Shown one piece after another: positions 19,801 through 56,502 of a DNA stretch of 64,000 nucleotides (within the stretch, counting starts at the first letter, position 1; the number at the start of each line of letters is the position of its first letter). The notes under the pieces are model-generated. The model ran no database searches and was not told where the DNA came from. It worked only from the letters and a program-made list of their open reading frames with translations. The position numbers were made by a program, and so were the translations under genes. This stretch comes from Octopus sinensis (Eukaryota): contig NW_021833118.1 of the NCBI RefSeq assembly GCF_006345805.1, positions 1 to 64,000 of the forward strand. The letters run 5' to 3'.

Positions 19801-19861
<61 letters not shown>

Positions 19862-20681
19862 CATCATCATCATCATCACTGATATCAATGACATTATCGC
19901 TTTCATGTGTAGTGGTTGCAGCAACAGCATCAGTAGCATAGTGGTAAGGGTGGTAGTTGGGCCTCAGTTGGGCGATCATAATAGTAGTAGTTGTAGTATT
20001 AGCAGCTGCAGAATATTATTATTTTTATTATTTTTATCATTGTCACCGTCACCACCACTACCACTGTTATAAACTTTATTACTAATTCCACTTATTATCA
20101 AAAGATTTCATTAAATGTTCTTTATTTTCAACTTTTGTCTTGTACTTGAGATAATCATAAAAATGTGGTTGTTGGAGGAAATAGTTGAGTAGCAGCTTGG
20201 TGAAAAGATCATATTCTACAGGTCTATAAATAGATTCTGCAGATGGTGGGGAGGGGTCTATAAATAGATTCTGCAGATGGTGGCGAATCTTCCCACCCTT
20301 TGGGTCAGCAGAGGTGAAATGTGTTTAGTACTACCAGTTACCATTGAGTGCGTTGCCTTGAAAGAAGCAATTCAACCTGTTCTATTTGTAATTACTGGTA
20401 GAAAAAACAATAATATATATACACATACACACACACAGACACACACGCACACACACATACACATATATATATATACTGATATTCACGTCGTTGAATTTTT
20501 GAAATTCTGAATTCAATTGTGTTGTTGCAATAAAAGGTATGTTTACGTATTTGGGTAATATCAAATATCAGGCCATCCGATAAGATCTGTCCGAATTTTG
20601 AATAAAGGAAACAAGAGATCAAATGTTATATTTATTTGAAATTTAATCATCATCATCATCATCATTATCATCATCATGATG

Positions 20682-20731
<50 letters not shown>

Positions 20732-20768
20732 TATTATTATTATTAATTATAATAATAATAATAATAAT

Positions 20769-21106
20769 GGGGGAGCATCATAGCCATGTGTTGAGAAGGA
20801 TTCTTTGGGGTTTGAATAATTCACCTCTGGAAACATGGGTGTTTTGTTCAACGTCCTTAAACAACCCTTATTCAGGGACCTTTTGAGCGGGATGGGTTAC
20901 TCGATCTGAAGAAAATTCTAACTGGGCTCCACCTGCAAGGTCATGTGCTGTTTATGTTGATATGAGATCACCATGTCGCGCACATATGGTTGTGATGCAT
21001 GTGCCTGGTGTACCCATATCAGACGAGTAGTCATGATGGGTATACTGGGCTTCGTATATTTTACCCCAGTGTCACTTTGATGGCATGCTCCGCTCGCTCA
21101 CTCAGT
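20769..21106 (+). mobile_element. 5'-truncated copy of the (TAA)n-flanked repeat (mirror at 62607-62945)
   Basis: GGGGAGCATCATAGCCATGTGTTGAG..CTCGCTCACTCAG-(TAA)n aligns to 11769-12108. Confidence 0.8.
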
Positions 21107-21143
21107 AATAATAATAATAATAATAATGTTAATAATAATAATT

Positions 21144-21174
<31 letters not shown>

Positions 21175-21215
21175 CATTATTATTTTTATTATAATTATTA
21201 TGATAATTATTATTA

Positions 21216-21295
<80 letters not shown>

Positions 21296-21315
21296 TAGTA
21301 GTAGTAGTAGTAGTA

Positions 21316-21364
<49 letters not shown>

Positions 21365-21367
<3 letters not shown>

Positions 21368-21515
21368 TCAAATTTTGAAACAAGGCCAGCAATTTTGGGG
21401 AAGACCTTAGTGTTCAAATGGTACTTAACTTAACGACTCCGAAAGGATGGAAGGCAAAGTCAGCATAAGCAGAATTTGGACACAAAATGTTAAGACAGAC
21501 GAAATGTCGCTCGCA
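21365..21515 (-). mobile_element. Degenerate SINE (mirror at 59150-59300)
   Basis: CAAGGCCAGCAATTTTGGGG..GGTACTTAACTTAACGACTCCGAAAGGATGGAAGGCAAAGTC. Confidence 0.75.
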
Positions 21516-21871
21516 TAATAAATGTTCCTTAAGTTGTACCGATGTCCTGTTGATCTTTGATGCCATTGTTTTTTTGCTCGCGTATGTGTATATGTATGTA
21601 TGTATGTATGCATGTATGTATGTATGTATGTATGTATGTATGTATGTTTGAATGTATGTATGTATGTATGCATGTATGTACGTACGTATGCGGGTAGGTA
21701 TGTACATATCTGTCTGTATATCTGCCTGTTTGCCTGTCTTCTGTCTCTGTATGATAGACTTTATATGTTAGACGTTTAATTGAAATACATAACATATGAC
21801 ATACACACATATGTATGTACTTATTCATATATGTATGCTATATATATATATATATTATATATATATATATT

Positions 21872-21908
<37 letters not shown>

Positions 21909-21918
21909 ATGCATGTAC

Positions 21919-21951
<33 letters not shown>

Positions 21952-21977
21952 TATATATATATGTATGTATGTATGTA

Positions 21978-22347
21978 TCTCTCTATATATAAACGGCAGT
22001 TTGTCTGTGTGTGTTTCTGTGTGTCTGTTAGGTTGTACCCTCACCCTGACCACGGCTTTCAACCGATTCTGATGAAACTTGACACACACATAGCCCAATG
22101 TCATAATTCAAAACTAACGCAGCGAAAATTTTGAAAAGTTCCCCCAGTTCTGAAAAAAATCGATAAATTCGACATGGGGTCGAGAATCAGAAACACAAAC
22201 CACAGACTGTCTAGGGGACGCAACTCGACCTTTTTAACTAAAAAAAATTTACCATCATTTTTTTTCCATTTTTTGGCTATAACTCTCTAAAAATGCTTTA
22301 TAGTTATTTCCCTTACAAACCCGAGCAACGCCGGGCGATACTGCTAG
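21978..22347 (+). mobile_element. Non-autonomous Helitron, left arm only
   Basis: A|TC start, 3' hairpin and CTAG|T end, near-identical to 8001-8387. The mirror site near 58680 is plain (TA)n. Confidence 0.85.
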
Positions 22348-22450
22348 TATTTATATATTTGTGAACAAACCGGATGTTACGGAGAACAGCGACACACATA
22401 GGTCTTTTTAAATAGTAACTGTAATTATATATTATTCATATAATAATATA

Positions 22451-22624
22451 TGTTCCATTTAGAGCGACTATACCTAAGCAATTGACCCAAAAAAGATGGG
22501 CCGAACCACTGCGAATTGAACACATCAATGCTTACACGGTTCCGGACGCAACCAATTCAGCCACAAAGCCCACATTGCCCTTTTTTCGGTCGCTTGTTTA
22601 GGTTTAATCTCTCTAAATGGAGCA
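22451..22624. mobile_element. MITE-like element with ~45 bp imperfect TIRs and TA flanks (mirror ~58415-58590)
   Basis: TGTTCCATTTAGAGCGACTATACCTAAGC.. versus ..GTTTAGGTTTAATCTCTCTAAATGGAGCA, 8 mismatches in 45 by eye. Related sequence continues to ~22910. Confidence 0.5.
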
Positions 22625-22941
22625 TATATTATTATATAAATGATATATAATTACAGTTATTATTAAAAAGGACCCATGTGTGTCTCTCTTCTCCGTAATT
22701 TACAGCCTTCGGGTTTATTTACAAAGGCTAACATTATCTATACATTAAATTGATGAAATTGATGAAATTGATGAGTGGGCTATGTGATTGAATTGGGTGT
22801 GTACGGAGCCATGTAAGCATTGATGTCATTTTCAAATCGCAGTGGTTCGGCGGTCCCTCTTTTTTCAGTTAATTGTTTAGATTTAATCGCTCTAAACGGA
22901 GAGTATATTATTATATAAATAATACATACATACATACATAT

Positions 22942-23015
<74 letters not shown>

Positions 23016-23601
23016 TACTACATATACCCAACTAATAAACTGTCACCTGCAAATATATTTTACTTAGTAAACGATAGCCGCAAGAATAAAGCGAACAAAC
23101 TAGTACCAGATTATGTAACCAATCTCAGGCATCCATATTTATTGATTTACTAAGATCCTTGGACCACACCGTATCACACAGTCACACTCACTGGATTAAT
23201 TCTTCATCCGGTAGTTCTGCTTTGGCAGGTATACTTGAGATATTCCCAGCGTTAATTCCTGAGGGTAGTCACCAACTGTTGACAAAGATCATCTCGTAAG
23301 CTATAAAGGACAGAGAAACAAAAGACTCTAACCAGAAATTGTTAAGTTTCCAACAATTTCTGATTAAAATTTGTTCCAGCTGAAATGTCCTAATAACAAA
23401 ACAATATCGATCTCCCTGTCGTCTGCCTGTCACAGAGTTTTATTTTCATTTCTTCTCTTTGATATGTTGGTGTTCTTTCGTCTTTAAACATACACATATT
23501 TCATGATTTAATTGTCACATCGTCCTTGATGATTTGATGATTTCAGTGTTTCTCATATTTATATTTTGTTATTTCAGATATCTGTTCACACTGGTTCAAC
23601 T

Positions 23602-25597
23602 ATGATTCACTTCAACGTAATTGTATTCCTCCTGGGGCTCTTATCACCATTAGTTTATTCTCATGGTTGTCGTATGGAAGACGACGTATGTGAGTTTAAG
23701 CTGGTAATTTCCTATAAATTAACTATGCTATACAATAAGATCTTGGTACTACCCCATAATGGAAAACTCTACAAATATGACGTCACTAATTTTACAAATG
23801 CTCAACCGATACCAACTGATAAAGTCATTACGATGGATGGTTTCTCTGAGTCAGTTAAGGTGATTACAGTAAATGGTACAGTTCCTGGACCAACGATAGA
23901 AGTTTATAAAGGACAAAGAGTCATCATTGAAGTAGAAAACCAATTATTTTCAGAAGGTACAACAATACATTGGCACGGCTTGCATCAAAGAGAAACATCA
24001 CATATGGATGGTGTACCTTGGGTTACACAGTGTCCAATTCAACCAGGTCAGTCGTTCAGATATGAATTTAATATTACACAAATTGGAACTTATTGGTACC
24101 ATTCTCATATTGGAACACAACGTACCATGGGAGTATTTGGTGCTTTGATACTACACGAAAAGACAAAACGTAAAATGGAAGAACATGTAATGGTAATCTC
24201 AGACTACAATCATGACTGGGATTCCGATATGAGTTTTTTAAAAGTTGGCATGGGACTTTATATGCATAAAAAAAAGGTTGATATTACCAGATCTGTTGAA
24301 GGAGGGCTTTTTAGTCTCTTTCAGTTCAATTCCGGAACTGTGAATGGTCGGGGCCGTTATTATGATGAGTCAGGGAAACATAATGAGGCTCCACTGACTG
24401 TCTTTGAAGTAGAATCAGGTAAAGAATATCGTTTTAGAGTGATCGCTGCAGGGGCTCTGTACCCATTTGAAGTATCTGTTGATGGTCACCAGATGGTAGT
24501 CATTGCCTCTGATGGTTATGACATAACACCAACACCTGTTGATTACTTTATCATCAACCCCGGTGAGAGATTTGACTTCACAATACATGCAAATAACTCT
24601 GTCGGAAATTACTGGATCCGCGGACAGACACTGCAAATGGGCAAAAATAATACATTTGAAGCAATTCTTCGATATAAAGGTGCACCGGTCGAAGAACCTA
24701 ACTCCACAGTTTCTGACTGCATTCAACAAAAGAACTGCACTTTACTCAACTGTCCCTTTCTTTATAATCCCCATAAAAGTGATAAACCATGTTTAACTTT
24801 TGGTGACTTAGAATCTAATTATCGAGATGTACCGCCTTTCCGGTCTGGAAAGTTTAAGGAACATTTTTTAAATTTTGCTTTTCCTGGTGAACCTGGGAAC
24901 ACACCTGCATCAATAAATGGTCGGGTGTTCGTGGAACCCACGGTAAACCCTTTAACACAACCAAATGAAATAGATAGTCCGTGTGATAAAGCCAACTGCG
25001 GTGTTGATAAAGTGTGTCGGTGTACTCATTCCATAAACCTGAAATTTGGTGATACAATTCAAGTTGTAATGACAAATCTGGGAAAAGGTAAAGGGTTCTC
25101 CCACCCTATACACATGCATGGACATTCATTTTATGTAGTTAAAATGGGATTTCCAAAATACAATGAAACAACGGGAAGAATAATAAATGATAGTACAGAT
25201 ATTGATTGCAGAGGTGATCCGAAAATGAACTATTGTAATGATGCGGCTTGGTCAAACAGTAAATGGGAGGGAGACAACATCCCCGGAATGAATTTACGAA
25301 ACCCTCCTCGAAAGGATGTAGTTATGGTCCCTACAGGTGGATACGTTGTAGTGAGAATACGGGCCGATAATCCTGGAATGTGGTTTGTGCACTGCCACAT
25401 TGAATTACACAGCAAGGAGGGAATGGCTCTTATTCTTAACGAATCTTTCGCTCGGTTGCCAGAAATGCCGGACAATCTCCCCGGGTGTCGTAGCTTCAAG
25501 AGAAGCGTTTACAACATAAGGAAAGATACTGGAAAGGATGACTGTAAGGACAGAAATGGTGAAGATGATAAGGATGATAAAGGTGATAATCATGGCG
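23602..25597 (+). CDS. Multicopper oxidase (laccase-like) gene A, large coding exon: signal peptide plus three cupredoxin domains
   Basis: ATG at 23602, 24 nt after an acceptor TTTTGTTATTTCAG (ends 23577). Signal peptide MIHFNVIVFLLGLLSPLVYS. Cu motifs HWHG, WYHSH, HPIHMHG and HCHIELHSKEGM (Met axial ligand) are intact. Phase-1 donor G|GTAAGG at 25598. Confidence 0.93.
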
Positions 25598-26033
25598 GTA
25601 AGGGATGTTATATTTTTATTGTTCTTTAATCTTTTCCTCGAGTTTCATCTCTTATTTTATAAATATTTTGAGAAGGCAAGACAGATGGGGTACTATCAGA
25701 TAGGTGGTGGAATAAAAGCAGTACTGTTCTTGAGAACGAGGTAGATTATGATTTCGTGATTTTAGAGATCGTGAGAAATGGCTGGAGAGAGAAGATGGAT
25801 GGAGGGAGTGAGAGATTGAATCGTTTGGCGATTATCATTTTGTTCAATGTCGTCGATCTGTTGTTGAAGACCTGAGTTGCTGCAGTTGTCGTTGTCGCTG
25901 TTGTATTCATCACCATGTTAACCATTGAGCTGACATGTCCAGAAATATATTTCAGCTTTTGTCATCACTTTTAAAAAAACTTTCTACACCACCCAACACT
26001 ACAATATCAAATGCATCCATTTCTAAATCGTTA

Positions 26034-26069
<36 letters not shown>

Positions 26070-27294
26070 GTCTACTCTTTATAGAGGGCAAGTAACAGCA
26101 CACGATCTTCTCTTGTTGGTTGGTCAGTGAACGAAGTTCATGTGGGTAACAAATACAGTTTAATTGGATCAGACTGAATTGTATCCTATTATCATTAAAA
26201 GCCAACTGCACCAGAGAACAAAATGACATTGATTATCAATAGATTAGGATACCTTCATCTATGATAAATCCTCGACTACCAATGACATCAGCTGATGCAA
26301 TAAATCAGTTTTGTTTTCTGCTATCAACTGCAAACGAAGATGAGATTCTCCGGGAATTTTAAAGGTGATTACTTTTTCCAGGTATTTCTTTAGTTTTGCC
26401 ATCAGGACACGGACGCACATACAATAAAGGAAACAACGTAAGTTCATTTCGTAAATTAGGATGAATACCTGTTCGTAAAGAGTTGCAGTCCTTTACTCTT
26501 GACCAATTTAGAAAATGATTGTGTGGAGAGAAAAGAATCCTGATGTTCGAGCAATGTTTTCCATCGTGGCAGTGCTGGTGGTGGTGATTGTGGTGGTGGT
26601 TGATCATCGTTGTTGCTAAAACTATATTTCGTATTACTATGTTATTATTCAAACTGTATACGTAAATCTATTGTGGATTTCCTAGCAGATTACGTGAATG
26701 AAAAACGAAAATCAATGACAAACTAATGTGTTACTAGTTGTTCTCTTTGGATTAAGTGAATTAATTTTGTTTCTGGAGGATTCTCAGTGTAATGTGTTGT
26801 ATTAGTTTGGCAACAAGGAAGTTATTCGTTGTAGGAACGCAATTCAATATTGACTGATGTATATCGCAGATGTACGGCTATGTTTCATGAGTGACGTCCT
26901 TAACTTGGAAAGCAAAACTACTACAAACGTTGCAAATAATAAACGAATAAACTCTTACTAGTGATCATTGGAATGGAAGTCATCACAATTATGGAGTGAT
27001 ACACTGAGAACAAACACGTATTGAAATTAAAATGGTACCAGTAGCTGCGTGTGCATGAATTATTTTTTGTCAGATGATGTGGAAACTGAAGAAACAAATG
27101 TATTTTTTACAGCAATAGGCTTATGGATAGAGTGCTAAATATTTAGAGAGTCTTAGTGGCATTTTTTGCTATTAGATCTTCCGTAATAGAGATATATTAT
27201 TTAATTATATTGTTACATAAGTGAGAGGGAAATGACTTCTTGAAATGCAACTGCCATTGAAGTTTTATATATTTTTATCTTCTGGTCACACATG

Positions 27295-27540
27295 TGGAGG
27301 TGCGTGGTTTAGTGGTTAGGGTGTTGGCCTCATGATCGTAAGATTGTAGTACCGATTCCTGGACCAGGTCACGCGTTGTTTTCTTGAGTAAAACACTTCG
27401 TTTAACTTTGCTCCACTTCACACTCAGCTGGGAAAAATGAGTAATCCTGCGACGGACCGGTGTCCTGTCAAAGCGGGGAATATATACGCCACAGAAACCG
27501 GAAAATCGTCCCTATGAGTTTATAGGACTCGAGAAGTAGA
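27295..27540 (+). mobile_element. tRNA-derived SINE (head H2 plus V-domain-like tail) in the gene A intron (mirror ~51555-51800)
   Basis: TGGTTTAGTGGTTAGGG..CGATTCCTGGACC..GAGTAATCCTGCGACGGACCGG..TACGCCACAGAAACC. Confidence 0.75.
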
Positions 27541-27965
27541 TTTACTACTATTTTTTACTACATATACCTAAAGTAGGGATCGGCAAACTATTTCAGATGT
27601 GGACTAGGTTGGGAATGTTTCGCTTTCTGAGGCAATACAAATAAAATGAAATGAAAATTAGACCATAGAGGGGTTTGCAAGTTCTAGCCATGACTGTACA
27701 TGTTTATATTCAGATACAGTAAATCAAGCGCATTATTTTTTAATGTACCCATTTTTTTTAACGTGGCACAGAGTAATTCAAGGAGATTTGGTTGCTATTT
27801 CAGAAAATATATCTTTGTTCTTATTCCTAACAGGTGAAGTTCGTAGGTTACTTTTGGGGTGTTTAATGCGCAGTTCGAATTCGTTCCTCGCAAGAAAATG
27901 CATTATTGAAATAAATAAATAAACTTATGAAATATTTCATTATATAATAATGAGCGAAGTGTATC

Positions 27966-28004
<39 letters not shown>

Positions 28005-28683
28005 CAAAATCCCTCAGAAGGGAGTGGGAGAAAGAATAATATAAGTGAAGGGAGAGGAGAGAAAATAGTAATTCAGTGAAGGAGAAATAGGGAGAGTAAT
28101 AGCCATAACTGAGAGGGAGTGAGAAAAAATAACAGCAATGTAAGAGAGGAAGTGGTAAAGAGAGTGTTGTGTATCTTATCTTCTACTATAATAATACTCT
28201 TGTGTATTTCTCCGTCACAACATATGAATAAGAAGGGAAGGGGTGATAGATGATTAAGGAAAGAAGGGGTGAGGGCAAACTTGGTAGTGGGATGATAGAA
28301 GTCCTATGGTGAAGAAAAAATCAAACAGCGTTTCAACTTTGCGTGAGTATGTGTGTGTGTATATAAAAGGAAGTCATGGAAATGTGTGTGTGTGTGTGTG
28401 CGTGTGTGTGTGTGTGAGAGTGCAATGAAAGTGGGATGGTAAACATTCAACGCTGAAAAGAAAAATCAAACAGCGTTTCAACTCTGTGTGAATATATTTG
28501 TGTAAGCGTCTGCGTGGACAAGGAAAGTGTGTGAATGTATGTATCTGTGATTATTATGTACCTTATTTATATAAAAAATACTAATTTTTGACGGCACGGG
28601 GCCGGCTAGTCTTTTTTTTTTTATTTTTTGCTATTTGTATATCTACCTAATAAACTCAATATTGTATTTCTTTTCCTTTACAG

Positions 28684-28799
28684 TTGCAGACGACTACACA
28701 GTACGAGTGGCACTTGGAGTTCTAATCGCTGTCGTCTGTATCCTGGCCATTCTTGTTGTTGTTCTTGTGTTCCTTGTTATAAGGAAGCAAAAGAATTAA
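28684..28799 (+). CDS. Predicted terminal transmembrane exon of gene A
   Basis: Polypyrimidine acceptor TATTTCTTTTCCTTTACAG. In phase 1 it reads VADDYTVR-VALGVLIAVVCILAILVVVLVFLVI-RKQKN*. Spliced CDS is 1996+116=2112 nt (703 aa). Not confirmed by transcript. Confidence 0.8.
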
Positions 28800-28920
28800 C
28801 TTTGAAAATCACCTGAAATCAATACGATCATAGATAGCAGTGGGGGAGAGTGGGGTGGGGGCGAATCTAAGATGTGCTAGAGTAATTTTGTGGGGTCTGT
28901 AAGTGCATAGTGTAAGGTTC

Positions 28921-29255
28921 GAGTGGGGTTTGGTAACTGATGTGTGTCGTGGGTCATGTATGTACTTGGTGGTATATAGTACATATAGTGTATTAGTAAT
29001 AGTATATAGTGTGATACAACACAATTACGACGGCATTATTAATTTTACATTATTACTACACTATTATTAATGTGGTGTGTGTGTGTGTGTATTTGTGTGT
29101 GTGTCTGTGTGTGTTGAGTGGGGTTTGGTAACTGATGTGTGTCGTGGGTTATGGATGTACTTGCTGGTATATAGTACAGATAGTGTATTAGTGATACAAC
29201 ACCATTACGACGGCATTATTAATTTTGCATTATTACTACACTATTATTAATGTGT
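28921..29255. repeat. Two-copy ~190 bp tandem duplication downstream of the TM exon (mirror ~49825-50160)
   Basis: GAGTGGGGTTTGGTAACTGATGTGTGTCGTGGG..ATTACGACGGCATTATTAATTTT starts at 28921 and again near 29116. Confidence 0.8.
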
Positions 29256-29303
29256 GTGTGTGTGTGAGCGTGTGTGTCTGATAGTGTAGTAATAATGGTA
29301 TTT

Positions 29304-29694
29304 GTGGAGGCGCAATGGCCCAGTGGTTAGGGCAGCGGACTCGCGGTTATAGGATCGCGGTTTCGATTCCCAGACCGGGCGTTCTTAGTGTTTATTGAGC
29401 GAAAACACCTAAAAAAGCTCCACGAGGCTCCGGTAGGGGATGGTGGTGATCCCTGCTGTACTCTTTCACCACAACTTTCTCTCACTCTTACTTCCTGTTT
29501 CTGTTGTACCTGTATTTCAAGGGGCCGGCCTTGTCACTCTCTGTGTCACGCTGAATATCCCCGAGAACTACGTTAAAGGTGCACGTGTCTGTGGAGTGCT
29601 CAGCCACTTACACGTTAATTTCACGAGCAGGCTGTTCCGTTGATTCGGATCAACCGGAACCCTCATCGTCGTAACCGACGGAGTACTTCCATCC
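29304..29694 (+). mobile_element. Full-length tRNA-derived SINE with 13 bp TSD (mirror 49388-49777)
   Basis: A box TGGCCCAGTGG, B box GGTTTCGATTCCC, TSD AATAATGGTATTT at 29291-29303 and 29695-29707. Confidence 0.9.
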
Positions 29695-30639
29695 AATAAT
29701 GGTATTTATTCATAATTAGTGAAAGCTGTCTTCATTGACGTTTAACTCTAGGTTCGAACCTATTGAATAGCCACGACCATCCCGTCTGGTATGTAAATAA
29801 TTCTTCTAGGATTACGTTATCTATCATGTCCAGTTTTTGCTTTAGAACGGAGGTAGATTTTTGACATCTAATTTTATCAACTCGAGTTGACGCGTAAATA
29901 TCCACTCGTTGAGATCGTATAACCATTGAAGTAAATTGTGGGTTTCTTTATGTTAATCTAACAATTATAAACGCTGTTTTGTCCAGAGCATTGGTATTTA
30001 ATAGTTGTAGACAGCAGAAGTGAAGCGTATATACTAAAAGAGTTAATGAGTGATACTGAAAGGGTAGAAGTATGATTCGAACCATTATCCTCAAGCTTAT
30101 AACTAATACAATGTTTTAATAAAAGCGCGTTTGTATAAGATGTATATGTGTGTGTGTGTGTGTTCTTATTTCACAAAACAGTTGAAATAAATTTCTAGTA
30201 TCAACTTCTCTATTGATATATTCAAATACACCTTTTATGATAACAAATATATGCAATGTCACTAATAATCTCATGTCCAAAAATTTCTTGAAGGCTGTTT
30301 ATATTATTGGTTGCTATTAAAAGTCTTCGGTATTCAGCCTTATCTGGATTTTAAAATACAGTGATCATGTTTTGGTTTAAATCTGCCGCCTGTTCCGATA
30401 TGTAAGTTCGTACATCAGATATTCGGTTCAGCCTAAATTTAAATTACTTACGTGACATAACTCTCCATTTTTCCAGTTTTAGTTATCTCTCTTGTTACTT
30501 CGAACTGTTGATTTCTGTTCATAGTTGGTTTCTTGTTTTATGGCTTCACTTGATGGTTTCGGACACTTATTTCGCTGCGAGGGTGAAGCCCATATCAGTC
30601 ACGTGATATCTTAAAACCTTCCAGAATCGTTAGTATGCC

Positions 30640-30830
30640 GGACAAAATGCTAAGCGGCTTTTCGTCTGCCTTTATGTTCTAAAATCAAATTCCGCCGAGA
30701 TTAACTTTGCCGTGCCATTCATCCTTTCAGAGTCGATAAAATAAGTACGGGTTGAGTACTGGTATAAACGTAACAGATTTAGCCCTACCCCTTAAATTGC
30801 AGGCGTTGTGCCAATATTTGAAACCATTCT
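30640..30830 (+). mobile_element. Degenerate SINE, Nin/Deu-like (mirror ~48240-48440)
   Basis: CAAATTCCGCCGAGATTAACTTTGCC..TTCATCCTTTCAGAGTCGATAAAATAAGTAC. Confidence 0.7.
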
Positions 30831-31454
30831 CCAAATCCTTACTTTTCGCTGATTAAACAGTTTAAAACATACCGCGTAAAAAACTATTTTCGGAAGTAAG
30901 GACAATAATGGATTTCCCCTTAAGGCTACATGGCGGTGTAAACCATAGTATATTGCCATTGTTATTGCAGTCTTATTGTTTTAGACAGCAGGAAGATAGT
31001 GATAACTGTAAAAATAAAAAAAAGTTATGTCAATGCTCCCCAAACCGAATCGCTGGCATACTAAACTACAGTCTAGGTAGAAAAAGAAGTATTTAGGCTG
31101 AACAAAGAATACATAGGCAATACTTTTTTTCCTTTTGCTTCATCAGAATGTGCTAATTGCTTTTTGAATACAAATATATACATAGTTGAGGTGTGAACGA
31201 ATCTAGATGTAAAACGGCGAAAAGACGTGTAAAAGAAATGTGAGAGAGGATGAATAGGATACCCAGCAAGGAGAAGGTTAGATTAAACTAGTGATGTCCT
31301 GTTACCTGGATAGCTAAGATTATAATTACAAAATTAGAAAATACTGAGGTGATTCAATTGTTTTAATTGACATAGAAACATATTTAATGGGTTTAAAAAT
31401 TGAATATGAATAATAGCTTCATAACGATTTTAATAGTGTATTAAGATATTTCAA

Positions 31455-31678
31455 AGAGAGAGAGAGAGAGAGAGACAGACAGAGAGAGACAGAGAACTTA
31501 AATCAGAAAATGAATCGCAGACTAAAAGGTCAGATATATAGCATATGACATGTTCTAGAAATAACGTTAATTTGGGTGAGAGAGTGAGTGAATGAGAGAG
31601 AGGGAGAGAGAGAGACACAGAGAGAGAGAGACAGACAGACAGGCATACAGACAGACAAATAAATGGATAGACAGATAT

Positions 31679-31709
<31 letters not shown>

Positions 31710-31714
31710 TATAT

Positions 31715-31757
<43 letters not shown>

Positions 31758-32015
31758 TTAAATCAGTAAATGAATCGTAGACTAAAAGGTCAGATAGATA
31801 GCATATAACAGATGTTTTAGAAATAGCGTTAAATTGGGTAAGAGAGTGAGTGAATGAGAGAGAGGGAGAAGGAGAGACAGACAGACAGACAGGGAGAGAC
31901 AGACAGACAGGGAGAGACAGACAGACAGGGAGAGACAGGGTGAGAGAGACAAAAAGAGACAGACAGAGAAGGCAGACAGAAGAGACAGACAGGCATACAG
32001 ACAGACAAATAATGA

Positions 32016-32084
<69 letters not shown>

Positions 32085-32107
32085 TAGACAGATATATAGA
32101 TAGATAG

Positions 32108-32147
<40 letters not shown>

Positions 32148-32150
32148 TAA
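31455..32150. repeat. Compound GA/GACA/GATA microsatellite with internal two-copy duplication (mirror ~46935-47620)
   Basis: GAGAACTTAAATCAG..TGAATCG..GACTAAAAGGTCAGAT..GAGAGTGAGTGAATGAGAG occurs near 31492 and 31752. Confidence 0.85.
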
Positions 32151-33343
32151 AATAAAAAAGATATACGCTTTATAAATGGATTGTTTTCTGTAATCTTTGT
32201 ATTCTATTCGCCCCGTCGACGGCGGGTTATCGTAAATATTTTATGATTCATCTTAACTTCCACAGAAATTGAAGAGTAATATGATGCTTTTTAAGCTGCT
32301 AACTTGTAATTCTCAGTGCATTACTTTTCCTTTTAATGATAATCATTGTAGAGGCGCATAACTATATTATTGTAGTCACTAATATTGAATCTACAAGTTT
32401 CTATGGTGATTAAAACAACTGCATCCCATCATAAATTTAATTATTAGTCTTAGTGGCTGAACTACAAGAAAGCGCTCAAATAACTTACCTTCCCACACCA
32501 TTGAACAGCGGTATTTTCTGCTTTCAACTTCATTCCTCCCAGCATTTTTCATCTTATTACAACAACTTCATACAAAGTTCCATTATTTAAAAATTGTAAC
32601 TAATTCTCAAGTACCGAAAGGGGAAATCTGCGATCACTGTAAATTTGGGAAAATCTTAAAAATATATATTTGTATTATTATGCAGACCGTCATTTGTTGT
32701 TTGTACCAAAACACAATACACATTATTGTATTGAAAACACGACTGTGTTCTAGTTTCATTTTTTGTAGAGAGACTATTATTTTTAATATTTTCGTATAAA
32801 ATACATGTTGCTCGTATGAAAAAAGTAAATACCCCAAATCCACCATAAAAGTTTCCATATCTTACATTCATAGTCTCATTTACATCTTGAGTTAAGGCTG
32901 GTACACAACACATTGGCGATTATTCATATTAGGATGGATACTATGGTAATGTAAATATTATCACCCGTAGTGATAATTTTAGTGTTGGATTTATATGTTA
33001 TCAGTCAAGTATTCTTATGTTGCTTGTCATGCATGTACATGGCATGCAAGACCAGTTTGGCATTGTGCTGTTAAGAAGAATGATTCCATAATTTCTCCAA
33101 ATGCAAATATATTAAAACGCGTTCATAAAAGAGAAAGGAGAAAAGAAAAAAGATGTATTTTGAACACTAATGTGTTCTGAAAATCGCGTTGAAAACGATA
33201 AAGCTTTTCCTCAATTTGAACAATGACAAATATATATTTTTATACATGAATTTTTGTAATACCCGTTGCGAGTTCCTGATATATTAATAATCTGATTTTC
33301 ATTTCTGTTTTATAATACTAAAAACTATATATATATACCATGT

Positions 33344-33374
<31 letters not shown>

Positions 33375-33952
33375 GTATGTATGTATGTATGTATATATGA
33401 ATATATATATATAGGTGTTAAATGACCACCTAAGGATATTAAATATTCAAAGAATTTACTGTCTTTTTGCCGATATAAATAACAATGTTATGACCTATTG
33501 CTCTTAACAAATAGGTAAATAAATAAATAAAATAAACATACAGAAATATATATTAGAAATGGAAACCAAAATAATAAATTCAACAATAAAATAATTCAAT
33601 CTTTAAATGATAAATTCAGTTCAATTTTATTTTGTGATACAAACAAATAACTCATGTAGTAAATTAGCTGATGCCACACCATTGATAAAAGCAAGTTTTT
33701 CAAGAATAATGAAACATCGTTTGAAATATAATGAGATTTCATCAGATAGATATATCTTCTTAAATGCCTTACGAAAAATAGCGCATGAAAATTTTTCTAA
33801 CTGCTAACGCTTTTAAAAAAAAAAAACCTTTTAAAGAGCGAGTCCAATCGTAAATAAATAATCTAACTGAAAGTTCGTAAATTCCTAAATTTAAATCTAT
33901 TAGTATCTAGTTCTATAACCGATTTTGTTGCATAATACATACATTCATATAG

Positions 33953-33994
<42 letters not shown>

Positions 33995-34183
33995 GCACAA
34001 ATACGTACACCACTCTATTTTTGTATATATACATACACATACACGTACGTCTACATACATGCATATTCATATGTACAAGTTTACTTATTCATACACACAC
34101 ACACTCATATATATATACATACATACATACATACATACATACATACACACACACACAGACGCACATATATATATATATATATA

Positions 34184-34385
34184 TTATTTTAAGCAGCAGA
34201 AAATTCAACAAAATCTGTTACTCTGAGTTTCTCGTTGCCGTTCATCAGACAGATGAACGGCAACGAGAAACTCAGAGTAACAGATTTTGCTGAATTTTCT
34301 GCTGCTTAAAATAAAGCATATTACTCTACCACTGGTATTTGAGTACTCTTTTTTCCACCTTGTTTCACATTTATGTGTTTACTCC

Positions 34386-34390
<5 letters not shown>
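34184..34390. mobile_element. Fold-back Penelope-pLTR mini-element between TA runs, left arm only
   Basis: 63 bp inverted arms (34184-34246 and 34252-34314, one mismatch, loop AGACA) followed by a tail homologous to the pLTR at 9826-9900. Absent at the mirror site near 44870. Confidence 0.7.
34214..34252 (-). ncRNA. Minimal hammerhead ribozyme-like motif
   Basis: Minus strand CTGT | CTGATGA | A-CG-GCAA-CG-A | GAAAC-TCAGA-GTA | ACAG has an intact CUGAUGA and GAAA core, a 4 bp stem I, a short stem II with GNRA loop, and a GUA triplet. Confidence 0.6.
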
Positions 34391-34429
<39 letters not shown>

Positions 34430-35587
34430 ATTATATATATATATATTTAAATGTATACATATGCAAGTCCATACACACATGTATATATATTTATGGTAAA
34501 ACATTAGTTTATATTTTAATTCAAATCTAAATAAAGAGATTTATAATATAAATTAAACTTACAACTTATTCAAGTCATACTTTAAAGTAAATAGAGGGGA
34601 AATAACTATTTTTCCATTTTCAGAAACAAAACGAACGAAATTAACATTTTTACATATGATGTTTTGTAATACTTATTATGATTTGTTGTTAAATAAAATA
34701 TTTACATTTTAATATTACTTGTTAGTTTTTATTACTGAAATAAACAGTTTACATTTGTGTCTCAAGTCCCAGATATGGTTAACTTATCTTGTGGTTTTTC
34801 TCTTATCCATATGCCGGAAGGACGTATGCACGCTACGCACCATAAGATCATCGTGGAACGATTCATTCCATGCGTTAATAGACAAAGGAAATGCAGACTT
34901 TGTTTAGCCGAAAGATCTATCCTTTTTAGATCTGAGATATTTATTAAAAATTCACAAGTTTCTTTTGTTGAACGGGAGGACACCATCCTCTTCGGTTTAA
35001 GCATACAGTCTCACAAACTATGACTTTCTCCCTGTTACATTAATTTATACACAAACCGTTTTAGAATTGATTCGAATGGGCACAAAGGACGCAACTTTTA
35101 AATTTCTGGGGTTTTTTTCTCATCCACTTTTATTTGACCCTCTCCCTCTAGTCGTTTCTCATGTTCTTTCTGTTTTCATCAGATCTATAAGAGATTAGGG
35201 TGGGATACCAATCAGGAGTTCAGATTGCCGAGGAAGATTATATGAGCGTTTAACGGCCTTTCGTGTGCAAAAAATGACCTTGAATTTTAAATGGACATTC
35301 ACTTCCTTCATCAGCTTGATTGCACCCCTTTTGCTTACTCGAATAAATTATTATATGGTTTGTGTAAATTGCTTCACAGGGAGAAGCTAAAGTTTGTGAG
35401 ACTGCATACTTAATTCAGAGAGGGTGGTATTCTCCAGTTCAACAAAATAAATTTGTCCATGTTTACATTTACTAAAAATCTCAGATCTGGAATTCTTGTC
35501 TCAATTACGAAAGTACATATAAACTCTTTATACTTATGCATGCATACATGTGTGTGTGTGTGTGTTTGTAGAAAACAAAAACGAAGG

Positions 35588-35744
35588 ATTGGCTGTGTTG
35601 TAAGTAGCTTGCTTACCAACCACATAGTTCCAGGTTCAGTCCCACTGCGTGGCACCTTGGGCAAGTGTCTTCTACTATAGCCTCGGGCCGACCAAGGCCT
35701 TGTGAGTGGATTTGGTAGACGGAAAGTGAAAGAAGGCCGTCGTA

Positions 35745-50298: not shown

Positions 50299-50396
50299 TT
50301 ATAACAAGGAACACCAGAACAACAACAACAAGACCAGGATACAGACGACAGCGATTAGAACTCCAAGTGCCACTCGTACCATGTAGTCGCCTGCAG
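50299..50396 (-). CDS. Right-arm copy of the terminal hydrophobic exon, net -1 frameshift
   Basis: Acceptor TATTTCTTTTCATTTACAG retained. Phase 1 reads AAGDYMVR-VALGVLIAVVCILVLLLLFWCSLL*. Joined to gene B it gives 1960+98=2058 nt (685 aa). The join is inferred. Confidence 0.6.
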
Positions 50397-51126: not shown

Positions 51127-52778
51127 GATACACTTCGCTCATTATTATATAATGAAATATTTCATAAGTTTATTTATTTATTTCAATAATGCATTTTCTT
51201 GCGAGGAACGAATTCGAACTGCGCATTAAACACCCCAAAAGTAACCTACGAACTTCACCTGTTAGGAATAAGAACAAAGATATATTTTCTGAAATAGCAA
51301 CCAAATCTCCTTGAATTACTCTGTGCCACGTTAAAAAAAATGGGTACATTAAAAAATAATGCGCTTGATTTACTGTATCTGAATATAAACATGTACAGTC
51401 ATGGCTAGAACTTGCAAACCCCTCTATGGTCTAATTTTCATTTCATTTTATTTGTATTGCCTCAGAAAGCGAAACATTCCCAACCTAGTCCACATCTGAA
51501 ATAGTTTGCCGATCCCTACTTTAGGTATATGTAGTAAAAAATAGTAGTAAATCTACTTCTCGAGTCCTATAAACTCATAGGGACGATTTTCCGGTTTCTG
51601 TGGCGTATATATTCCCCGCTTTGACAGGACACCGGTCCGTCGCAGGATTACTCATTTTTCCCAGCTGAGTGTGAAGTGGAGCAAAGTTAAACGAAGTGTT
51701 TTACTCAAGAAAACAACGCGTGACCTGGTCCAGGAATCGGTACTACAATCTTACGATCATGAGGCCAACACCCTAACCACTAAACCACGCACCTCCACAT
51801 GTGTGACCAGAAGATAAAAATATATAAAACTTCAATGGCAGTTGCATTTCAAGAAGTCATTTCCCTCTCACTTATGTAACAATATAATTAAATAATATAT
51901 CTCTATTACGGAAGATCTAATAGCAAAAAATGCCACTAAGACTCTCTAAATATTTAGCACTCTATCCATAAGCCTATTGCTGTAAAAAATACATTTGTTT
52001 CTTCAGTTTCCACATCATCTGACAAAAAATAATTCATGCACACGCAGCTACTGGTACCATTTTAATTTCAATACGTGTTTGTTCTCAGTGTATCACTCCA
52101 TAATTGTGATGACTTCCATTCCAATGATCACTAGTAAGAGTTTATTCGTTTATTATTTGCAACGTTTGTAGTAGTTTTGCTTTCCAAGTTAAGGACGTCA
52201 CTCATGAAACATAGCCGTACATCTGCGATATACATCAGTCAATATTGAATTGCGTTCCTACAACGAATAACTTCCTTGTTGCCAAACTAATACAACACAT
52301 TACACTGAGAATCCTCCAGAAACAAAATTAATTCACTTAATCCAAAGAGAACAACTAGTAACACATTAGTTTGTCATTGATTTTCGTTTTTCATTCACGT
52401 AATCTGCTAGGAAATCCACAATAGATTTACGTATACAGTTTGAATAATAACATAGTAATACGAAATATAGTTTTAGCAACAACGATGATCAACCACCACC
52501 ACAATCACCACCACCAGCACTGCCACGATGGAAAACATTGCTCGAACATCAGGATTCTTTTCTCTCCACACAATCATTTTCTAAATTGGTCAAGAGTAAA
52601 GGACTGCAACTCTTTACGAACAGGTATTCATCCTAATTTACGAAATGAACTTACGTTGTTTCCTTTATTGTATGTGCGTCCGTGTCCTGATGGCAAAACT
52701 AAAGAAATACCTGGAAAAAGTAATCACCTTTAAAATTCCCGGAGAATCTCATCTTCGTTTGCAGTTGATAGCAGAAAA

Positions 52779-53757
52779 CAAAATTTAAAAACTGTTCCTC
52801 AAACTTTCCAGACCGGAAAGGCGGTACATCCTGATAATTAGATTCTAAGTCACCAAAAGTTAAACATGGTTTATCACTTCTATAGGGATCATAAAGAAAG
52901 GGACAGTTGAGTAAAGTGCAGTTCTTTTGTTGTATGCAGTCAGAAACTGTGGAGTTAGGTTCTTCGACCGGTGCACCCTTATATCGAAGAATTGCTTCAA
53001 ATGTATTATTTTTGTCTATTTGCATTGTCTGTCCGCGGATCCAGTAATTTCTGACAGAGTTATTTGCATGTATTGTGAAGTCAAATCTCTCACCGGGGTT
53101 GATGATAAAGTAATCAACAGGTGTTTTGTTTTTATGTCAAAACCATCAGAGGCAATGACTACCATCTGGTGACCATCAATAGATACTTCAAATGGATACA
53201 GAGCCCCTGCAGCGATCACTCTAAAACGATATTCTTTACCTGTTTCTACTTCAAAGACAGTCAGTGGAGCCCCATTATGTTTCCCTGACTCATCATAATA
53301 ACGGCCCCGACCATTCACAGTTCCGGAATTGAACTGAAAGAGACTAAAAAGCCCTCCTTCAAGAGAACTGGTAATACCAACCTTTTGGTTATTCACATAA
53401 AGTCCCATGCTAACTTTTAAAAAACTCATATCGGAATCCCAGTCATGATTGTAGTCTGAGATTACCATTACATGTTCTTCCATTTTACGTTTTGTCTTTT
53501 CGTGTAGTATCAAACCGCCAAATAGTCCCATCGTACGTTGTGTCCCAAGATGAGAATGGTACCAAAATGTTCCAGTTTGTGTAACATTAAATTCATATCT
53601 GAACGTCTGACCTAGTTGAATTGGACACTGTGTAACCCAAGGTACACCATCCATATGTGATGTTTCTCTTTGATGCAAGCCGTGCCAATGTATTGTTATA
53701 GATTCTGAAAATAATTGGTTTTCTACTTCAATGATGACTCTTTGTTCTTTATAAACT
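52779..53757 (-). pseudogene. Multicopper oxidase copy C, truncated at both ends and frameshifted
   Basis: Starts at VYKEQRVIIEVEN, keeps HWHG and WYHSH, has a +2 shift near 53125-53135, and ends at FLNF fused to intron sequence. Lacks the signal peptide and domain 3 Cu ligands. Closer to A than to B. Confidence 0.85.
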
Positions 53758-54542: not shown

Positions 54543-56502
54543 CGTGTTCTGAAGTATTTTTATCACCAACACCTTTTGTTTCTTCATTATAAACTCCTTT
54601 CTCGAAACTTCGACATGCAGGGAAATTGACAGGGATTTTTGGTAAGTGGGCAAAAGATTCATTTAGAACCATTGCCATTCCGTCCTTACTGTGTAATTCA
54701 ATATGGCAGTGCATGATCCATACTCCAGGATTATCGGCCACTATTCTCACTACAACGTATCCACCTGTAGGGACCATAATTGTATCCTTTTGAGGGGGGG
54801 TTCGTAAATTCATTCCGGGGATGTTGTCTCCTTCCCAGTTGCTATTTGACCAAACCGCATCATTACAATAGTTCATTTTCGGATCACCTCTGCAATCAAT
54901 ATCTACAGTATCATTTATTATTTCTCCCGTTGTTTCATTGTATTTTGGAAACCCCATTTTAACTACATAAAATGAATGTCCATGCATGTGTATAGGGTGG
55001 GAGAACCCTTTACCTTTTCCAAGATTTGTCATTACAACTTGAATTGTATCACGATATTTCAGGTTTATAGAATAAGTACACCGACACACTTTATCAACAC
55101 CGCAGTTGGCATTATCACACAGACTATCTATTTCTTTTGGTTGTGTTAAAGGGTTTACCGTGGGTTCCACGAACACACGACCATTTACTGATGCTGGTGT
55201 GTATCCTGGCTCGCCAGGAAAAGCAAAATTTAAAAAATATTCCTCAAACCTCCCAGACTTGTATGGAGGTACAACAACAGGGTAATCAAGTTCCAAGTCA
55301 TTAAACTGTAAACACCGTTTATTACTTTTCTCGGGATAATAAAGAAAGGGGCAGTTGAGTAAAGTGCAGTCCTTTTGTTGAACGCAGTCAGAAACCGTGG
55401 AGTTGGGTTCTTCGTCCAGTGCACCCTTATAACGAAGAATTGCTTCAAATGTATTATTTTTTTCAATTTCCATTGTTTTTCCACGAATCCAATAATTTCC
55501 GACAGAGTTATTTGCCTTCAATATAAAGTCAAATCTCTCACCCGGACTGAGGATGAAATAATCAACAGCTGTTGGTTTTAGGTCAAAACCATCAGAGGCA
55601 ACGACTACCATCTGGTGACCATCAACAGACACTTCAAACGGGTAAAGGTACCCTGCAGCGATCACTCTAAAACGATACTCTTTACCTTGTTCTACTTCAA
55701 AGACAGTCAGTGGAGCCCCATTATGTTTCCCTGTTTCATCATAATAACGGCCTCGACCATTCACAATACCAGAATGGAAATTAAAAAGACTAAAATGTGC
55801 CCCATCTAGAGATTTGGAACTGCCAATGTTTTTACGGTTCCAATAGAATCCGAATTTCATTTTTAAGTAACTCACATCGGAGTCCCAGTTATGGTTGTAG
55901 TCTTTTATTAACATCACATGTTCTTCCATTTTACGTTTTGTCTTTTCGTGTATTATAAAACCACCAAATAGTCCCATCGTACGTTGTGTCCCAAGATGAG
56001 AATGGTACCAATAAGTTCCAGTTTGTGTAACATTAAATTCATATCTGAACGACTGACCTGGTTGAACTGGACACTGTGAAACCCAAGGTACGCCATCCAT
56101 ATGAGGTGTTCCTTTTTGATGAATGCCGTGCCAATGTATTGTTGTAGATTCTGAAAATAATCGGTTTTCTACTTCAATGATGACTCTTTGTCCTTTATAA
56201 ACTTCTATTGTTGGTCCAGGAACTGTGCCATTAACTGCAATCACCTTAACTGACTCAGAGAAACCATCCATCGTAATGACTTTATCAGTTGGTATCGGTT
56301 GAGCATTTGTAAAATTAGTGACGTCATATTTGTAGAGTTTTCCATTATGGGGTAGTACCAAGATCTTATTGTATAGCATAGTTAATTTATAGGAAATTAC
56401 CAGCTTAAACTCACACACGTCGTCTTCCATACGACAACCATGAGAATAAACTAATGGTGATAAGAGCCCTAGGAGGAATACAATTATGTTGAAGTGAATC
56501 AT
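54543..56502 (-). CDS. Multicopper oxidase (laccase-like) gene B, large coding exon
   Basis: ATG at 56502, 24 nt after the same acceptor as A. Signal peptide and all four Cu motifs (HWHG, WYHSH, HPIHMHG, HCHIELHSKDGM) are intact. Phase-1 donor G|GTAAGG at 54542. Confidence 0.92.

What the first reader, a model, noticed from the sequence alone, without database searches (positions are those of the whole stretch)
23602..28799. Hidden transmembrane exon makes gene A a type I membrane-anchored laccase
Seen: the 687 aa ORF in the track runs through a GTAAG donor found at the equivalent position in B. 3.1 kb downstream a good acceptor opens, in the right phase, a 25-residue hydrophobic stretch followed by RKQKN*. 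Known: signal peptide, three cupredoxin domains and a C-terminal TM is the topology of yeast Fet3-type cell-surface oxidases. The Met axial ligand is shared with ascorbate oxidase and insect MCOs. Inference: a cell-surface oxidase of unknown substrate (phenols, pigment precursors or Fe(II)).
Basis: partly seen in the sequence, partly recalled or inferred. Interest (0 to 1): 0.75.

Follow-up and report, generated by a model that had tools for sequence, protein, structure and literature searches.

The report
Membrane-anchored octopus laccase, already annotated
The predicted extra exon is real and gives this octopus copper oxidase a membrane anchor, but the same 703-residue protein is already in the public Octopus sinensis annotation and the design is common in molluscs and annelids, so it is correct but ordinary.

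Summary
Exon 1 (23602-25597) ends at G|GTAAG in phase 1. The acceptor TTTACAG|T at 28684 opens VADDYTVR, a 25-residue hydrophobic stretch, then RKQKN and a stop at 28799, giving 703 aa.

It is not new. The window is Octopus sinensis scaffold VCDQ01003333.1, positions 1-64000. The 703-aa product is identical to RefSeq XP_036355374.1/XP_036355375.1 (laccase-like isoform X1), annotated at 23602-28799. Isoform X2 uses a donor 15 nt upstream and the same acceptor.

The layout of one long exon, a phase-1 intron and a short transmembrane exon recurs in O. bimaculoides, a cuttlefish, a gastropod and an annelid. Of the 120 best homologues, 74 carry a hydrophobic C-terminal tail.

All ten histidine, one cysteine and the axial methionine copper ligands are invariant. 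AlphaFold gives three cupredoxin domains, a disordered acidic linker and one helix (670-702).

The closest solved structures are a termite laccase, ascorbate oxidase and fungal laccases. Fet3p ranks about 41st, and the position matching its D409 is a lysine. The Fet3 comparison therefore holds for topology only.

Side observation: a 1-bp-deleted version of the transmembrane exon lies behind gene B and behind the allelic copy of A.

The parts
23602..25597 (+). Gene A coding exon 1: start codon, signal peptide (about residues 1-20, 23602-23661), three cupredoxin domains and an acidic linker. It ends in phase 1.
   Evidence: Translation. Pfam Cu-oxidase_3 at residues 84-187, Cu-oxidase at 242-361 and Cu-oxidase_2 at 461-613. 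Copper ligands H123, H125, H167, H169, H501, H504, H506, H597, C598, H599, H603 and M608 are invariant in 31 homologues.
25583..25584 (+). Alternative donor (AAAG|GTGATA; the exon then ends at 25582) used by RefSeq isoform X2 (698 aa). Same phase and same acceptor.
   Evidence: Joining 23602-25582 to 28684-28799 translates exactly to P0125 = XP_036355376.1.
25598..28683 (+). Phase-1 intron of gene A, 3086 nt, from GTAAGG to TTTACAG. It contains microsatellites and a tRNA-like SINE head near 27296-27380.
   Evidence: The same donor and acceptor sequences occur in O. bimaculoides.
28684..28799 (+). Gene A terminal coding exon: juxtamembrane VADDYTVR, transmembrane helix at residues 674-698 (28707-28781), cytoplasmic RKQKN (28782-28796) and stop (28797-28799).
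   Evidence: The AlphaFold helix spans 670-702. The tail is identical in O. vulgaris CAI9735106.1 and near-identical in O. bimaculoides.
54543..56502 (-). Gene B (paralogue) coding exon 1, ending CAC G|GTAAGG in phase 1.
   Evidence: It is 79% aa identical to A, with dS 0.25 and dN/dS 0.42.
50299..50396 (-). Gene B terminal exon. It is a copy of the transmembrane exon with a 1-bp deletion, so the tail reads AAGDYMVRVALGVLIAVVCILVLLLLFWCSLL* and lacks the basic RKQKN end.
   Evidence: Alignment. Exon 1 plus this exon equals P0128 = XP_036355377.1, 685 aa.
52775..53757 (-). Truncated third laccase copy inside gene B's intron. It is 95% identical to A 23901-24881 and lacks the C-terminal copper sites.
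   Evidence: Pfam finds Cu-oxidase_3 and Cu-oxidase in ORF 53016-53771.

Best explanation
Gene A of Octopus sinensis is a two-coding-exon gene for a 703-residue three-domain multicopper oxidase of the laccase / ascorbate-oxidase type, tethered to the membrane as a type I protein.

Shown here:
- The splice 25597^28684 is in frame, and its product is identical to the public RefSeq model.
- All copper ligands are present.
- The last exon encodes a single hydrophobic helix followed by RKQKN.
- The same layout of a long exon, a phase-1 intron and a short transmembrane exon is conserved across molluscs and an annelid.

Inferred mechanism:
- The N-terminal signal peptide sends the chain into the ER.
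- The glycosylated catalytic domains end up outside the cell or inside an organelle lumen, held about 35-45 residues from the bilayer by a disordered acidic linker.
- Substrate electrons enter at the type 1 copper (H501, C598, H603, axial M608).
- They pass through the H597-C598-H599 triad to the trinuclear cluster, where O2 is reduced to water.

The substrate is not determined. The most likely class is phenols, aromatic amines or ascorbate rather than Fe(II).
For: - The joined CDS is in frame and 703 aa long.
- The exact sequence is XP_036355374.1/XP_036355375.1, annotated at 23602-28799 of VCDQ01003333.1, and the window is identical to that record.
- A second annotated isoform uses the same acceptor.
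- The O. bimaculoides orthologue uses the same donor and acceptor sequences.
- A phase-1 intron precedes the transmembrane exon in cuttlefish, Gigantopelta and Owenia.
- 74 of 120 homologues have a hydrophobic tail, mostly followed by basic residues, with 5-50 residues after the hydrophobic 19-mer. 119 of 120 have an axial Met.
- Pfam finds the three domains, and the ligands are invariant.
- The AlphaFold model has mean pLDDT 83.7, a disordered linker at 638-668 and a helix at 670-702.
- The nearest structures are termite laccase 8r7i, ascorbate oxidase 1aoz and fungal or plant laccases.
- All ten sequons lie N-terminal to the helix, and the charge distribution is positive-inside.
Against: - No transcript reads could be inspected here. 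A protein search with the C-terminal 125 residues found no transcript-derived fragment spanning the junction.
- On the allelic scaffold VCDQ01003116.1 the same gene is annotated as the 675-aa read-through form. A soluble isoform or allele may therefore exist.
- No dedicated signal-peptide, transmembrane or GPI predictor was available. The cytoplasmic tail is only five residues.
- Mollusc laccase activity has been reported mainly in plasma (PMC4722754).
Confidence: 0.85

Rival explanations
1. The donor is often or always read through, or the transcript ends in the intron. The product would then be a soluble secreted 675-aa laccase ending GKGCYIFIVL, and the downstream exon would be unused or used only in a minority of transcripts.
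For: - The 675-aa read-through protein is an annotated product on the 99.5%-identical scaffold VCDQ01003116.1.
- About a third of homologues lack a hydrophobic tail.
- Laccase-type activity in snails is mostly in plasma.
Against: - RefSeq gives two spliced isoforms on this scaffold.
- The transmembrane exon and its phase-1 intron are conserved from octopus to annelid.
- The read-through tail has no counterpart in homologues.
- On the other scaffold the transmembrane exon carries the 1-bp deletion, which may be why a different model was chosen there.
Confidence: 0.1
2. The C-terminal hydrophobic stretch is a GPI-attachment signal that is cleaved off, as proposed for insect MCO1. The mature enzyme would then be lipid-anchored rather than a type I transmembrane protein.
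For: - Insect MCO1 has a C-terminal transmembrane region and is predicted to be GPI-anchored (PMC4593997).
- The octopus cytoplasmic tail is very short at five residues.
- The 1-bp-deleted variant ends directly in hydrophobic residues and has small residues (AAG) about 8-10 positions upstream.
Against: - The intact tail ends in three basic residues after 25 hydrophobic ones.
- Most homologues have 13-50 residues, rich in Arg and Lys, after the hydrophobic segment. That is typical of a stop-transfer anchor and not of a GPI signal.
- No GPI predictor was run.
Confidence: 0.1
3. It is a Fet3/hephaestin-like cell-surface ferroxidase that works in iron transport.
For: - It has the same overall topology as Fet3p, with a signal peptide, three cupredoxin domains and a C-terminal transmembrane helix.
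- Insect MCO1 has been linked to iron homeostasis.
Against: - Fet3p ranks about 44th by sequence (E 3.8e-44, against 1e-65 for laccases) and 41st by fold.
- The residue four positions before the type 1 histidine, which is D409 in Fet3p, is Lys497 here and Lys in the family consensus.
- The axial ligand is Met, whereas Fet3p has Leu (from general knowledge, not tested).
- Insect MCO1 orthologues are reported to be better ascorbate oxidases than ferroxidases.
Confidence: 0.07

Closest known systems
RefSeq XP_036355374.1 / XP_036355375.1, laccase-like isoform X1 [Octopus sinensis], with isoform X2 XP_036355376.1
   Same: X1 is identical over all 703 residues and has the same coordinates (23602-25597 and 28684-28799) on the scaffold the window comes from.
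   Different: X1 does not differ. X2 uses a donor 15 nt upstream and lacks the residues GDNHG.
Lophotrochozoan membrane-tailed laccase-like oxidases, for example O. bimaculoides LOC106881493 (P0002), Acanthosepion P0006, Gigantopelta P0008 and Owenia P0057
   Same: They are 48-84% identical. They share the three domains, the axial Met, the C-terminal hydrophobic helix followed by basic residues, and the phase-1 intron before the transmembrane exon.
   Different: Octopus tails are very short (5-8 residues after the hydrophobic stretch), against 13-50 in most bivalves and gastropods. Octopus linkers are rich in Asp and Lys.
Insect multicopper oxidase-1 (MCO1 / laccase-1)
   Same: [quoted passage not shown] The top structural match to gene A is an insect (termite) laccase, 8r7i.
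   Different: MCO1 is predicted to be GPI-anchored. Orthology to the mollusc genes was not tested. MCO1's reported activities, ascorbate oxidase and weak ferroxidase, have not been shown for any mollusc enzyme.
Yeast Fet3p
   Same: It is a type I membrane protein with three cupredoxin domains outside the cell and a single C-terminal transmembrane helix.
   Different: It is more distant than laccases and ascorbate oxidase by sequence and by fold. The D409-equivalent position is Lys here. Gene A has an axial Met. No Ftr1-type partner is known in animals (from general knowledge).
Plant ascorbate oxidase (1AOZ)
   Same: It has an axial Met, and it is the second-best structural match (TM-score 0.79 normalised to the target).
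   Different: It is soluble and secreted with no membrane tail. Sequence identity is only 22%.

Membership tests
Three-domain blue multicopper oxidase (laccase / ascorbate oxidase type) | Three cupredoxin domains (Pfam Cu-oxidase_3, Cu-oxidase, Cu-oxidase_2) | tested here: met
   E-values are 1.7e-46, 7.8e-29 and 8e-38, all far above the curated cut-offs. The AlphaFold core is confident, and Foldseek probability is 1.00 against laccases.
Three-domain blue multicopper oxidase (laccase / ascorbate oxidase type) | Ten His and one Cys copper ligands in the four motifs HWH, HSH, HPxHxH and HCHxxxH | tested here: met
   H123, H125, H167, H169, H501, H504, H506, H597, C598, H599 and H603 are invariant in 31 aligned homologues.
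Three-domain blue multicopper oxidase (laccase / ascorbate oxidase type) | Oxidase activity on phenols, aryl amines or ascorbate with O2 reduced to water | not testable with these tools
   This needs enzyme assays.
Lophotrochozoan membrane-tailed laccase-like oxidases (as annotated in public genomes) | C-terminal hydrophobic helix followed by basic residues | tested here: met
   The Kyte-Doolittle 19-mer score is 3.76 and the tail is RKQKN. 74 of 120 homologues share the feature. The AlphaFold helix spans 670-702.
Lophotrochozoan membrane-tailed laccase-like oxidases (as annotated in public genomes) | Tail encoded on a separate last exon after a phase-1 intron | tested here: met
   All five loci solved have this layout: the window, O. 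bimaculoides, Acanthosepion, Gigantopelta and Owenia.
Fet3p-type ferroxidase | Type I topology with a single C-terminal transmembrane helix | tested here: met
Fet3p-type ferroxidase | Acidic residue equivalent to D409, four residues before the type 1 His ligand H413 | tested here: not met
   The type 1 His of the HPxHxH motif is H501, and the residue at position -4 is K497. The family consensus there is also K. The Fet3p numbering comes from PMC9880977. The mapping is by position only and assumes no indel in those four residues. No direct alignment to Fet3p was made.
Fet3p-type ferroxidase | [quoted passage not shown] | not tested
   No residue-level alignment to 1ZPU was available.
Fet3p-type ferroxidase | Closer to Fet3p than to laccases or ascorbate oxidase | tested here: not met
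   By sequence, 1zpu scores E 3.8e-44, against 9.4e-66 for laccases and 2.5e-52 for 1aoz. It ranks 41st in Foldseek.
Insect MCO1 | Signal peptide plus carboxyl-terminal transmembrane or GPI region on a three-domain oxidase | tested here: met
   The feature is described in PMC4593997.
Insect MCO1 | Orthology (phylogenetic placement with MCO1 rather than with other animal oxidases) | not tested
   No insect sequences were among the 120 best hits, and no tree was built.

The most novel reading that the evidence does not exclude
The membrane tail of this octopus laccase may be polymorphic and may be exchanged between the arms of a roughly 20-kb inverted duplication.
- An intact stop-transfer version (…VFLVIRKQKN) lies behind gene A on this scaffold.
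- A 1-bp-deleted version (…LLLLFWCSLL, no basic end) lies behind gene B, behind the allelic copy of A, and in the chromosome copy of B.
- The allelic copy of A is annotated as a read-through soluble form.

If the variants differ in anchoring (transmembrane helix, GPI-like or released), the locus would produce anchored and shed oxidase from near-identical genes by gene conversion.

More broadly, the tailed lophotrochozoan laccases could be the counterparts of insect MCO1. They would then be cell-surface redox enzymes rather than the plasma 'phenoloxidases' they are usually taken for.
Probability: 0.15. Interest if true: 0.35.

Novelty: already known. Interest (0 to 1): 0.12.

Why it matters
It adds little beyond confirming the annotation. 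The exact protein is already in RefSeq. Membrane-tethered multicopper oxidases are well known from yeast (Fet3p), insects (MCO1) and, from general knowledge, mammals (hephaestin).

There are two modest points of value:
- The mollusc immunity papers that I opened, and the open-access full-text searches I ran, treat laccases as humoral or extracellular phenoloxidases and do not discuss the membrane tail. Yet about 60% of the closest homologues carry one.
- Any study of cephalopod laccases, such as laccase-3 in the squid light organ, should take the tether into account when localising or expressing the enzyme.

Tried and rejected
- **Transcript evidence.** I searched the protein database with only the C-terminal 125 residues, hoping to catch transcript-derived fragments that span the junction. 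It returned three unrelated partial hits and no octopus transcripts, so it was a dead end.
- **Conservation between A and B as evidence of selection on the exon.** I rejected this. The whole 7.9-kb segment around the exon is 97.8% identical between the two arms, so exon identity there says nothing. The octopus species are also about 88% identical right through the intron. I used distant species and intron phase instead.
- **Literature on a transmembrane tail in mollusc or cephalopod laccases.** Six searches, of the eight run in total, turned up no explicit description, and nor did the passages read in five of the papers found. The insect paper PMC4387078 is not held.
- **tRNA-like element in the intron.** ARAGORN called no tRNA.
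- **Residue-level comparison with Fet3p.** Only the D409 position could be mapped, by its spacing from the copper ligand. E185 and D283 could not be mapped.
- **B-arm frameshift as a sequencing error.** I considered this and rejected it. The same variant, with its linked substitutions, is present in three separately assembled copies.
Full report
**What is in the sequence**

- The plus-strand ORF 23566-25629 (687 aa from a TTG) is present. Its first ATG is at 23602.
- The ORF reads through CAT GGC G|GTAAGG. If the GT at 25598-25599 is used as a donor, the exon ends at 25597 with one base of the next codon. That is phase 1, since 1996 nt = 665 codons + 1.
- A strong acceptor lies 3086 nt downstream: TGTATTTCTTTTCCTTTACAG|TT, with the first exon base at 28684.
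- The joined reading frame continues as V-ADDYTVR-VALGVLIAVVCILAILVVVLVFLVI-RKQKN-stop. The product is 703 aa and ends at 28799.
- Gene B on the minus strand has the matching donor, CAC G|GTAAGG at 54543|54542, also in phase 1.

**Is it more than chance?**

- I read all 672 AG dinucleotides in the 10 kb downstream of the donor in phase 1.
- Thirteen give a strongly hydrophobic 19-mer. Five of these are the same exon entered at later AGs. The rest come from microsatellite-like repeats with poor polypyrimidine tracts.
- Only 28684 combines a pyrimidine tract of at least 0.8 with a strongly hydrophobic frame, scoring 3.76. The one other site with such a tract scores only 1.82.

**Identity of the window and of the gene**

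- The best protein hits are octopus laccase-like proteins.
- An exact-sequence look-up shows that the 703-aa product is RefSeq XP_036355374.1/XP_036355375.1, 'laccase-like isoform X1 [Octopus sinensis]'.
- The gene is annotated at 23602-28799 of scaffold VCDQ01003333.1 in assembly GCA_006345805.1. The fetched locus is base-for-base identical to window 13602-38799.
- Isoform X2 (XP_036355376.1, 698 aa) corresponds to a second donor 15 nt upstream (AAAG|GTGATA, exon end 25582) joined to the same acceptor.
- From general knowledge, NCBI's pipeline normally issues alternative isoforms only when transcript alignments support them. I could not inspect that evidence here.

**Evidence from relatives**

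- The O. bimaculoides orthologue (LOC106881493; 83-84% identical) has the same donor sequence ATGGCG|GTAAGGGA and acceptor TTTACAG|CT. Its tail is …VALGVLIAVVCILAILVVVLVFIVVRKQKN.
- The O. vulgaris model CAI9735106.1 ends with a tail identical to that of gene A.
- The two octopus genomes are about 88% identical even through the intron, so I looked further away.
- In a cuttlefish (Acanthosepion), a gastropod (Gigantopelta) and an annelid (Owenia), the homologous genes have the same layout. One long exon encodes the whole enzyme, followed by a phase-1 GT..AG intron (3043, 3598 and 783 nt) and a short last exon that encodes the hydrophobic helix and a basic tail.
- Among the 120 best homologues, which span molluscs, an annelid and nemerteans, 74 have a C-terminal hydrophobic 19-mer scoring at least 1.6. 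It is usually followed by Arg/Lys-rich tails, with 5-50 residues after the hydrophobic 19-mer. 119 of the 120 have Met at the axial position.
- The tail is therefore an old and widespread feature of this family.

**The protein**

- Pfam finds Cu-oxidase_3, Cu-oxidase and Cu-oxidase_2 in order.
- In an alignment of 31 homologues, all ten histidine ligands, C598 and M608 are invariant.
- All ten NxS/T sequons lie before the helix. The flanks are DDYTVR on the outside and RKQKN on the inside. This fits a type I orientation.
- AlphaFold (mean pLDDT 83.7, pTM 0.83) gives a confident beta-rich core, a disordered acidic linker at 638-668 and one helix at 670-702.
- By sequence, the nearest solved proteins are fungal laccases (E about 1e-65), then ascorbate oxidase (2.5e-52), then Fet3p (3.8e-44).
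- By fold, the top match is the termite blue laccase BP76 (8r7i), followed by ascorbate oxidase. Fet3p ranks 41st.

**Function and mechanism**

- Three things are shown: the gene structure, the copper sites and the hydrophobic tail.
- Four steps are inferred from established knowledge of multicopper oxidases and of type I membrane proteins:
  - The signal peptide is cleaved near residue 20.
  - The catalytic domains face the outside of the cell or an organelle lumen.
  - Electrons enter at the type 1 copper.
  - They pass through the His-Cys-His triad to the trinuclear cluster, which reduces O2 to water.
- The substrate is open.
- Against a Fet3-like ferroxidase: Fet3p's D409 lies four residues before its type 1 histidine H413 (PMC9880977). 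The same position here is Lys497, and Lys is the family consensus. This mapping is by position only. E185 and D283 could not be mapped.
- Insect MCO1 is described with a signal peptide and a C-terminal transmembrane region predicted to be a GPI signal. It is reported as a better ascorbate oxidase than ferroxidase (PMC4593997).
- Mollusc and squid papers treat laccases as phenoloxidase-type immune enzymes. Neither those papers nor the searches I ran turned up any mention of the membrane tail.

**Rivals**

- *Soluble read-through form.* The 675-aa read-through protein is an annotated product on a second scaffold, VCDQ01003116.1, which is 99.5% identical to the window over 22 kb. There, however, the transmembrane exon carries a 1-bp deletion, which may explain why a different model was chosen.
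- *GPI anchor instead of a helix.* This cannot be excluded without a predictor or an experiment. The basic residues after the hydrophobic stretch, here and across the family, argue against it.

**Things seen in passing**

- Genes A and B lie in a large inverted duplication. Exon 1 differs considerably between them (87% nt, 79% aa, dS 0.25, dN/dS 0.42), although the first 100 codons are 97-99% identical. The 7.9 kb that includes the transmembrane exon is 97.8% identical. This is a mosaic typical of gene conversion.
- B's terminal exon (50396-50299, minus strand) has a 1-bp deletion that changes the tail to …CILVLLLLFWCSLL*. RefSeq annotates this product as XP_036355377.1. The same variant occurs behind the allelic copy of A and in the chromosome copy of B. 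It is therefore a real haplotype and not a random error.
- The intact version is ancestral, because O. bimaculoides and O. vulgaris both have it.
- A truncated third laccase copy sits in B's intron.
- The chromosome copy joins the left flank of the A arm directly to the B arm. The interior of the palindrome is therefore inverted relative to this scaffold.

**Verdict**

- It belongs to a widespread, if little discussed, family of tailed lophotrochozoan laccase-like oxidases.
- Interest is low.

Noticed in passing
window 50299-50396 (-); L007 about 15083-15190; L009 about 15690-15784: A variant of the transmembrane exon carries a 1-bp deletion and several linked substitutions. Its tail reads …CILVLLLLFWCSLL* and lacks RKQKN. 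It lies behind gene B in the window, behind the allelic copy of gene A on scaffold VCDQ01003116.1, and in the chromosome (CM016875.1) copy of B. The intact version is ancestral. The pattern suggests gene conversion between the palindrome arms, or a polymorphism in how the enzyme is anchored.
   Followed up: partly
window about 19800-38100 versus 63930-40700: A large inverted duplication is centred near 39.4 kb and its identity is mosaic. Exon 1 of A and B is 87% identical, with the first 100 codons at 97-99%. The region 26309-34185 versus 52783-44864 is 97.8% identical, and the upstream regions are about 90-93% identical.
   Followed up: partly
window 52775-53757 (-): A truncated third laccase copy lies inside gene B's intron. 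It covers parts of the Cu-oxidase_3 and Cu-oxidase domains only. It is 95% identical to A 23901-24881, and it abuts the A-like intron sequence directly, as if 1.4 kb had been deleted. O. bimaculoides LOC106881494 isoform X1 (873 aa) also has a partial laccase segment appended.
   Followed up: partly
L009 (CM016875.1:38833303-38859086) versus window 18314-19847 and 64000-51814: In the chromosome-scale record, the sequence left of the A arm continues straight into the B arm. The interior of the palindrome is therefore inverted relative to this scaffold. This is either an inversion polymorphism between haplotypes or an assembly difference. The window scaffold and VCDQ01003116.1 look like unplaced haplotigs of this chromosome region.
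   Followed up: partly
L007 10001-12028 (VCDQ01003116.1): On the 99.5%-identical scaffold, the same gene A is annotated as a 675-aa read-through product ending GKGCYIFIVL. This may be a soluble isoform, or an artefact of annotating a frameshifted last exon.
   Followed up: partly
window 18052-18924 (-): A 290-aa ORF matches reverse transcriptase (RVT_1, E 1.9e-18). It is a retroelement remnant upstream of gene A.
   Followed up: no
window about 27296-27380 (+), with a copy in the B arm near 51500-51700: A tRNA-like sequence (GGTGCGTGGTTTAGTGGTTAGGG…) lies inside the intron and is probably the head of a SINE. ARAGORN calls no tRNA gene.
   Followed up: partly
window 23570-23601 (+): An acceptor-like TATTTCAG lies 24 nt upstream of the ATG. 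Two RefSeq protein accessions exist for the same isoform. Together these suggest one or more untranslated 5' exons upstream.
   Followed up: no
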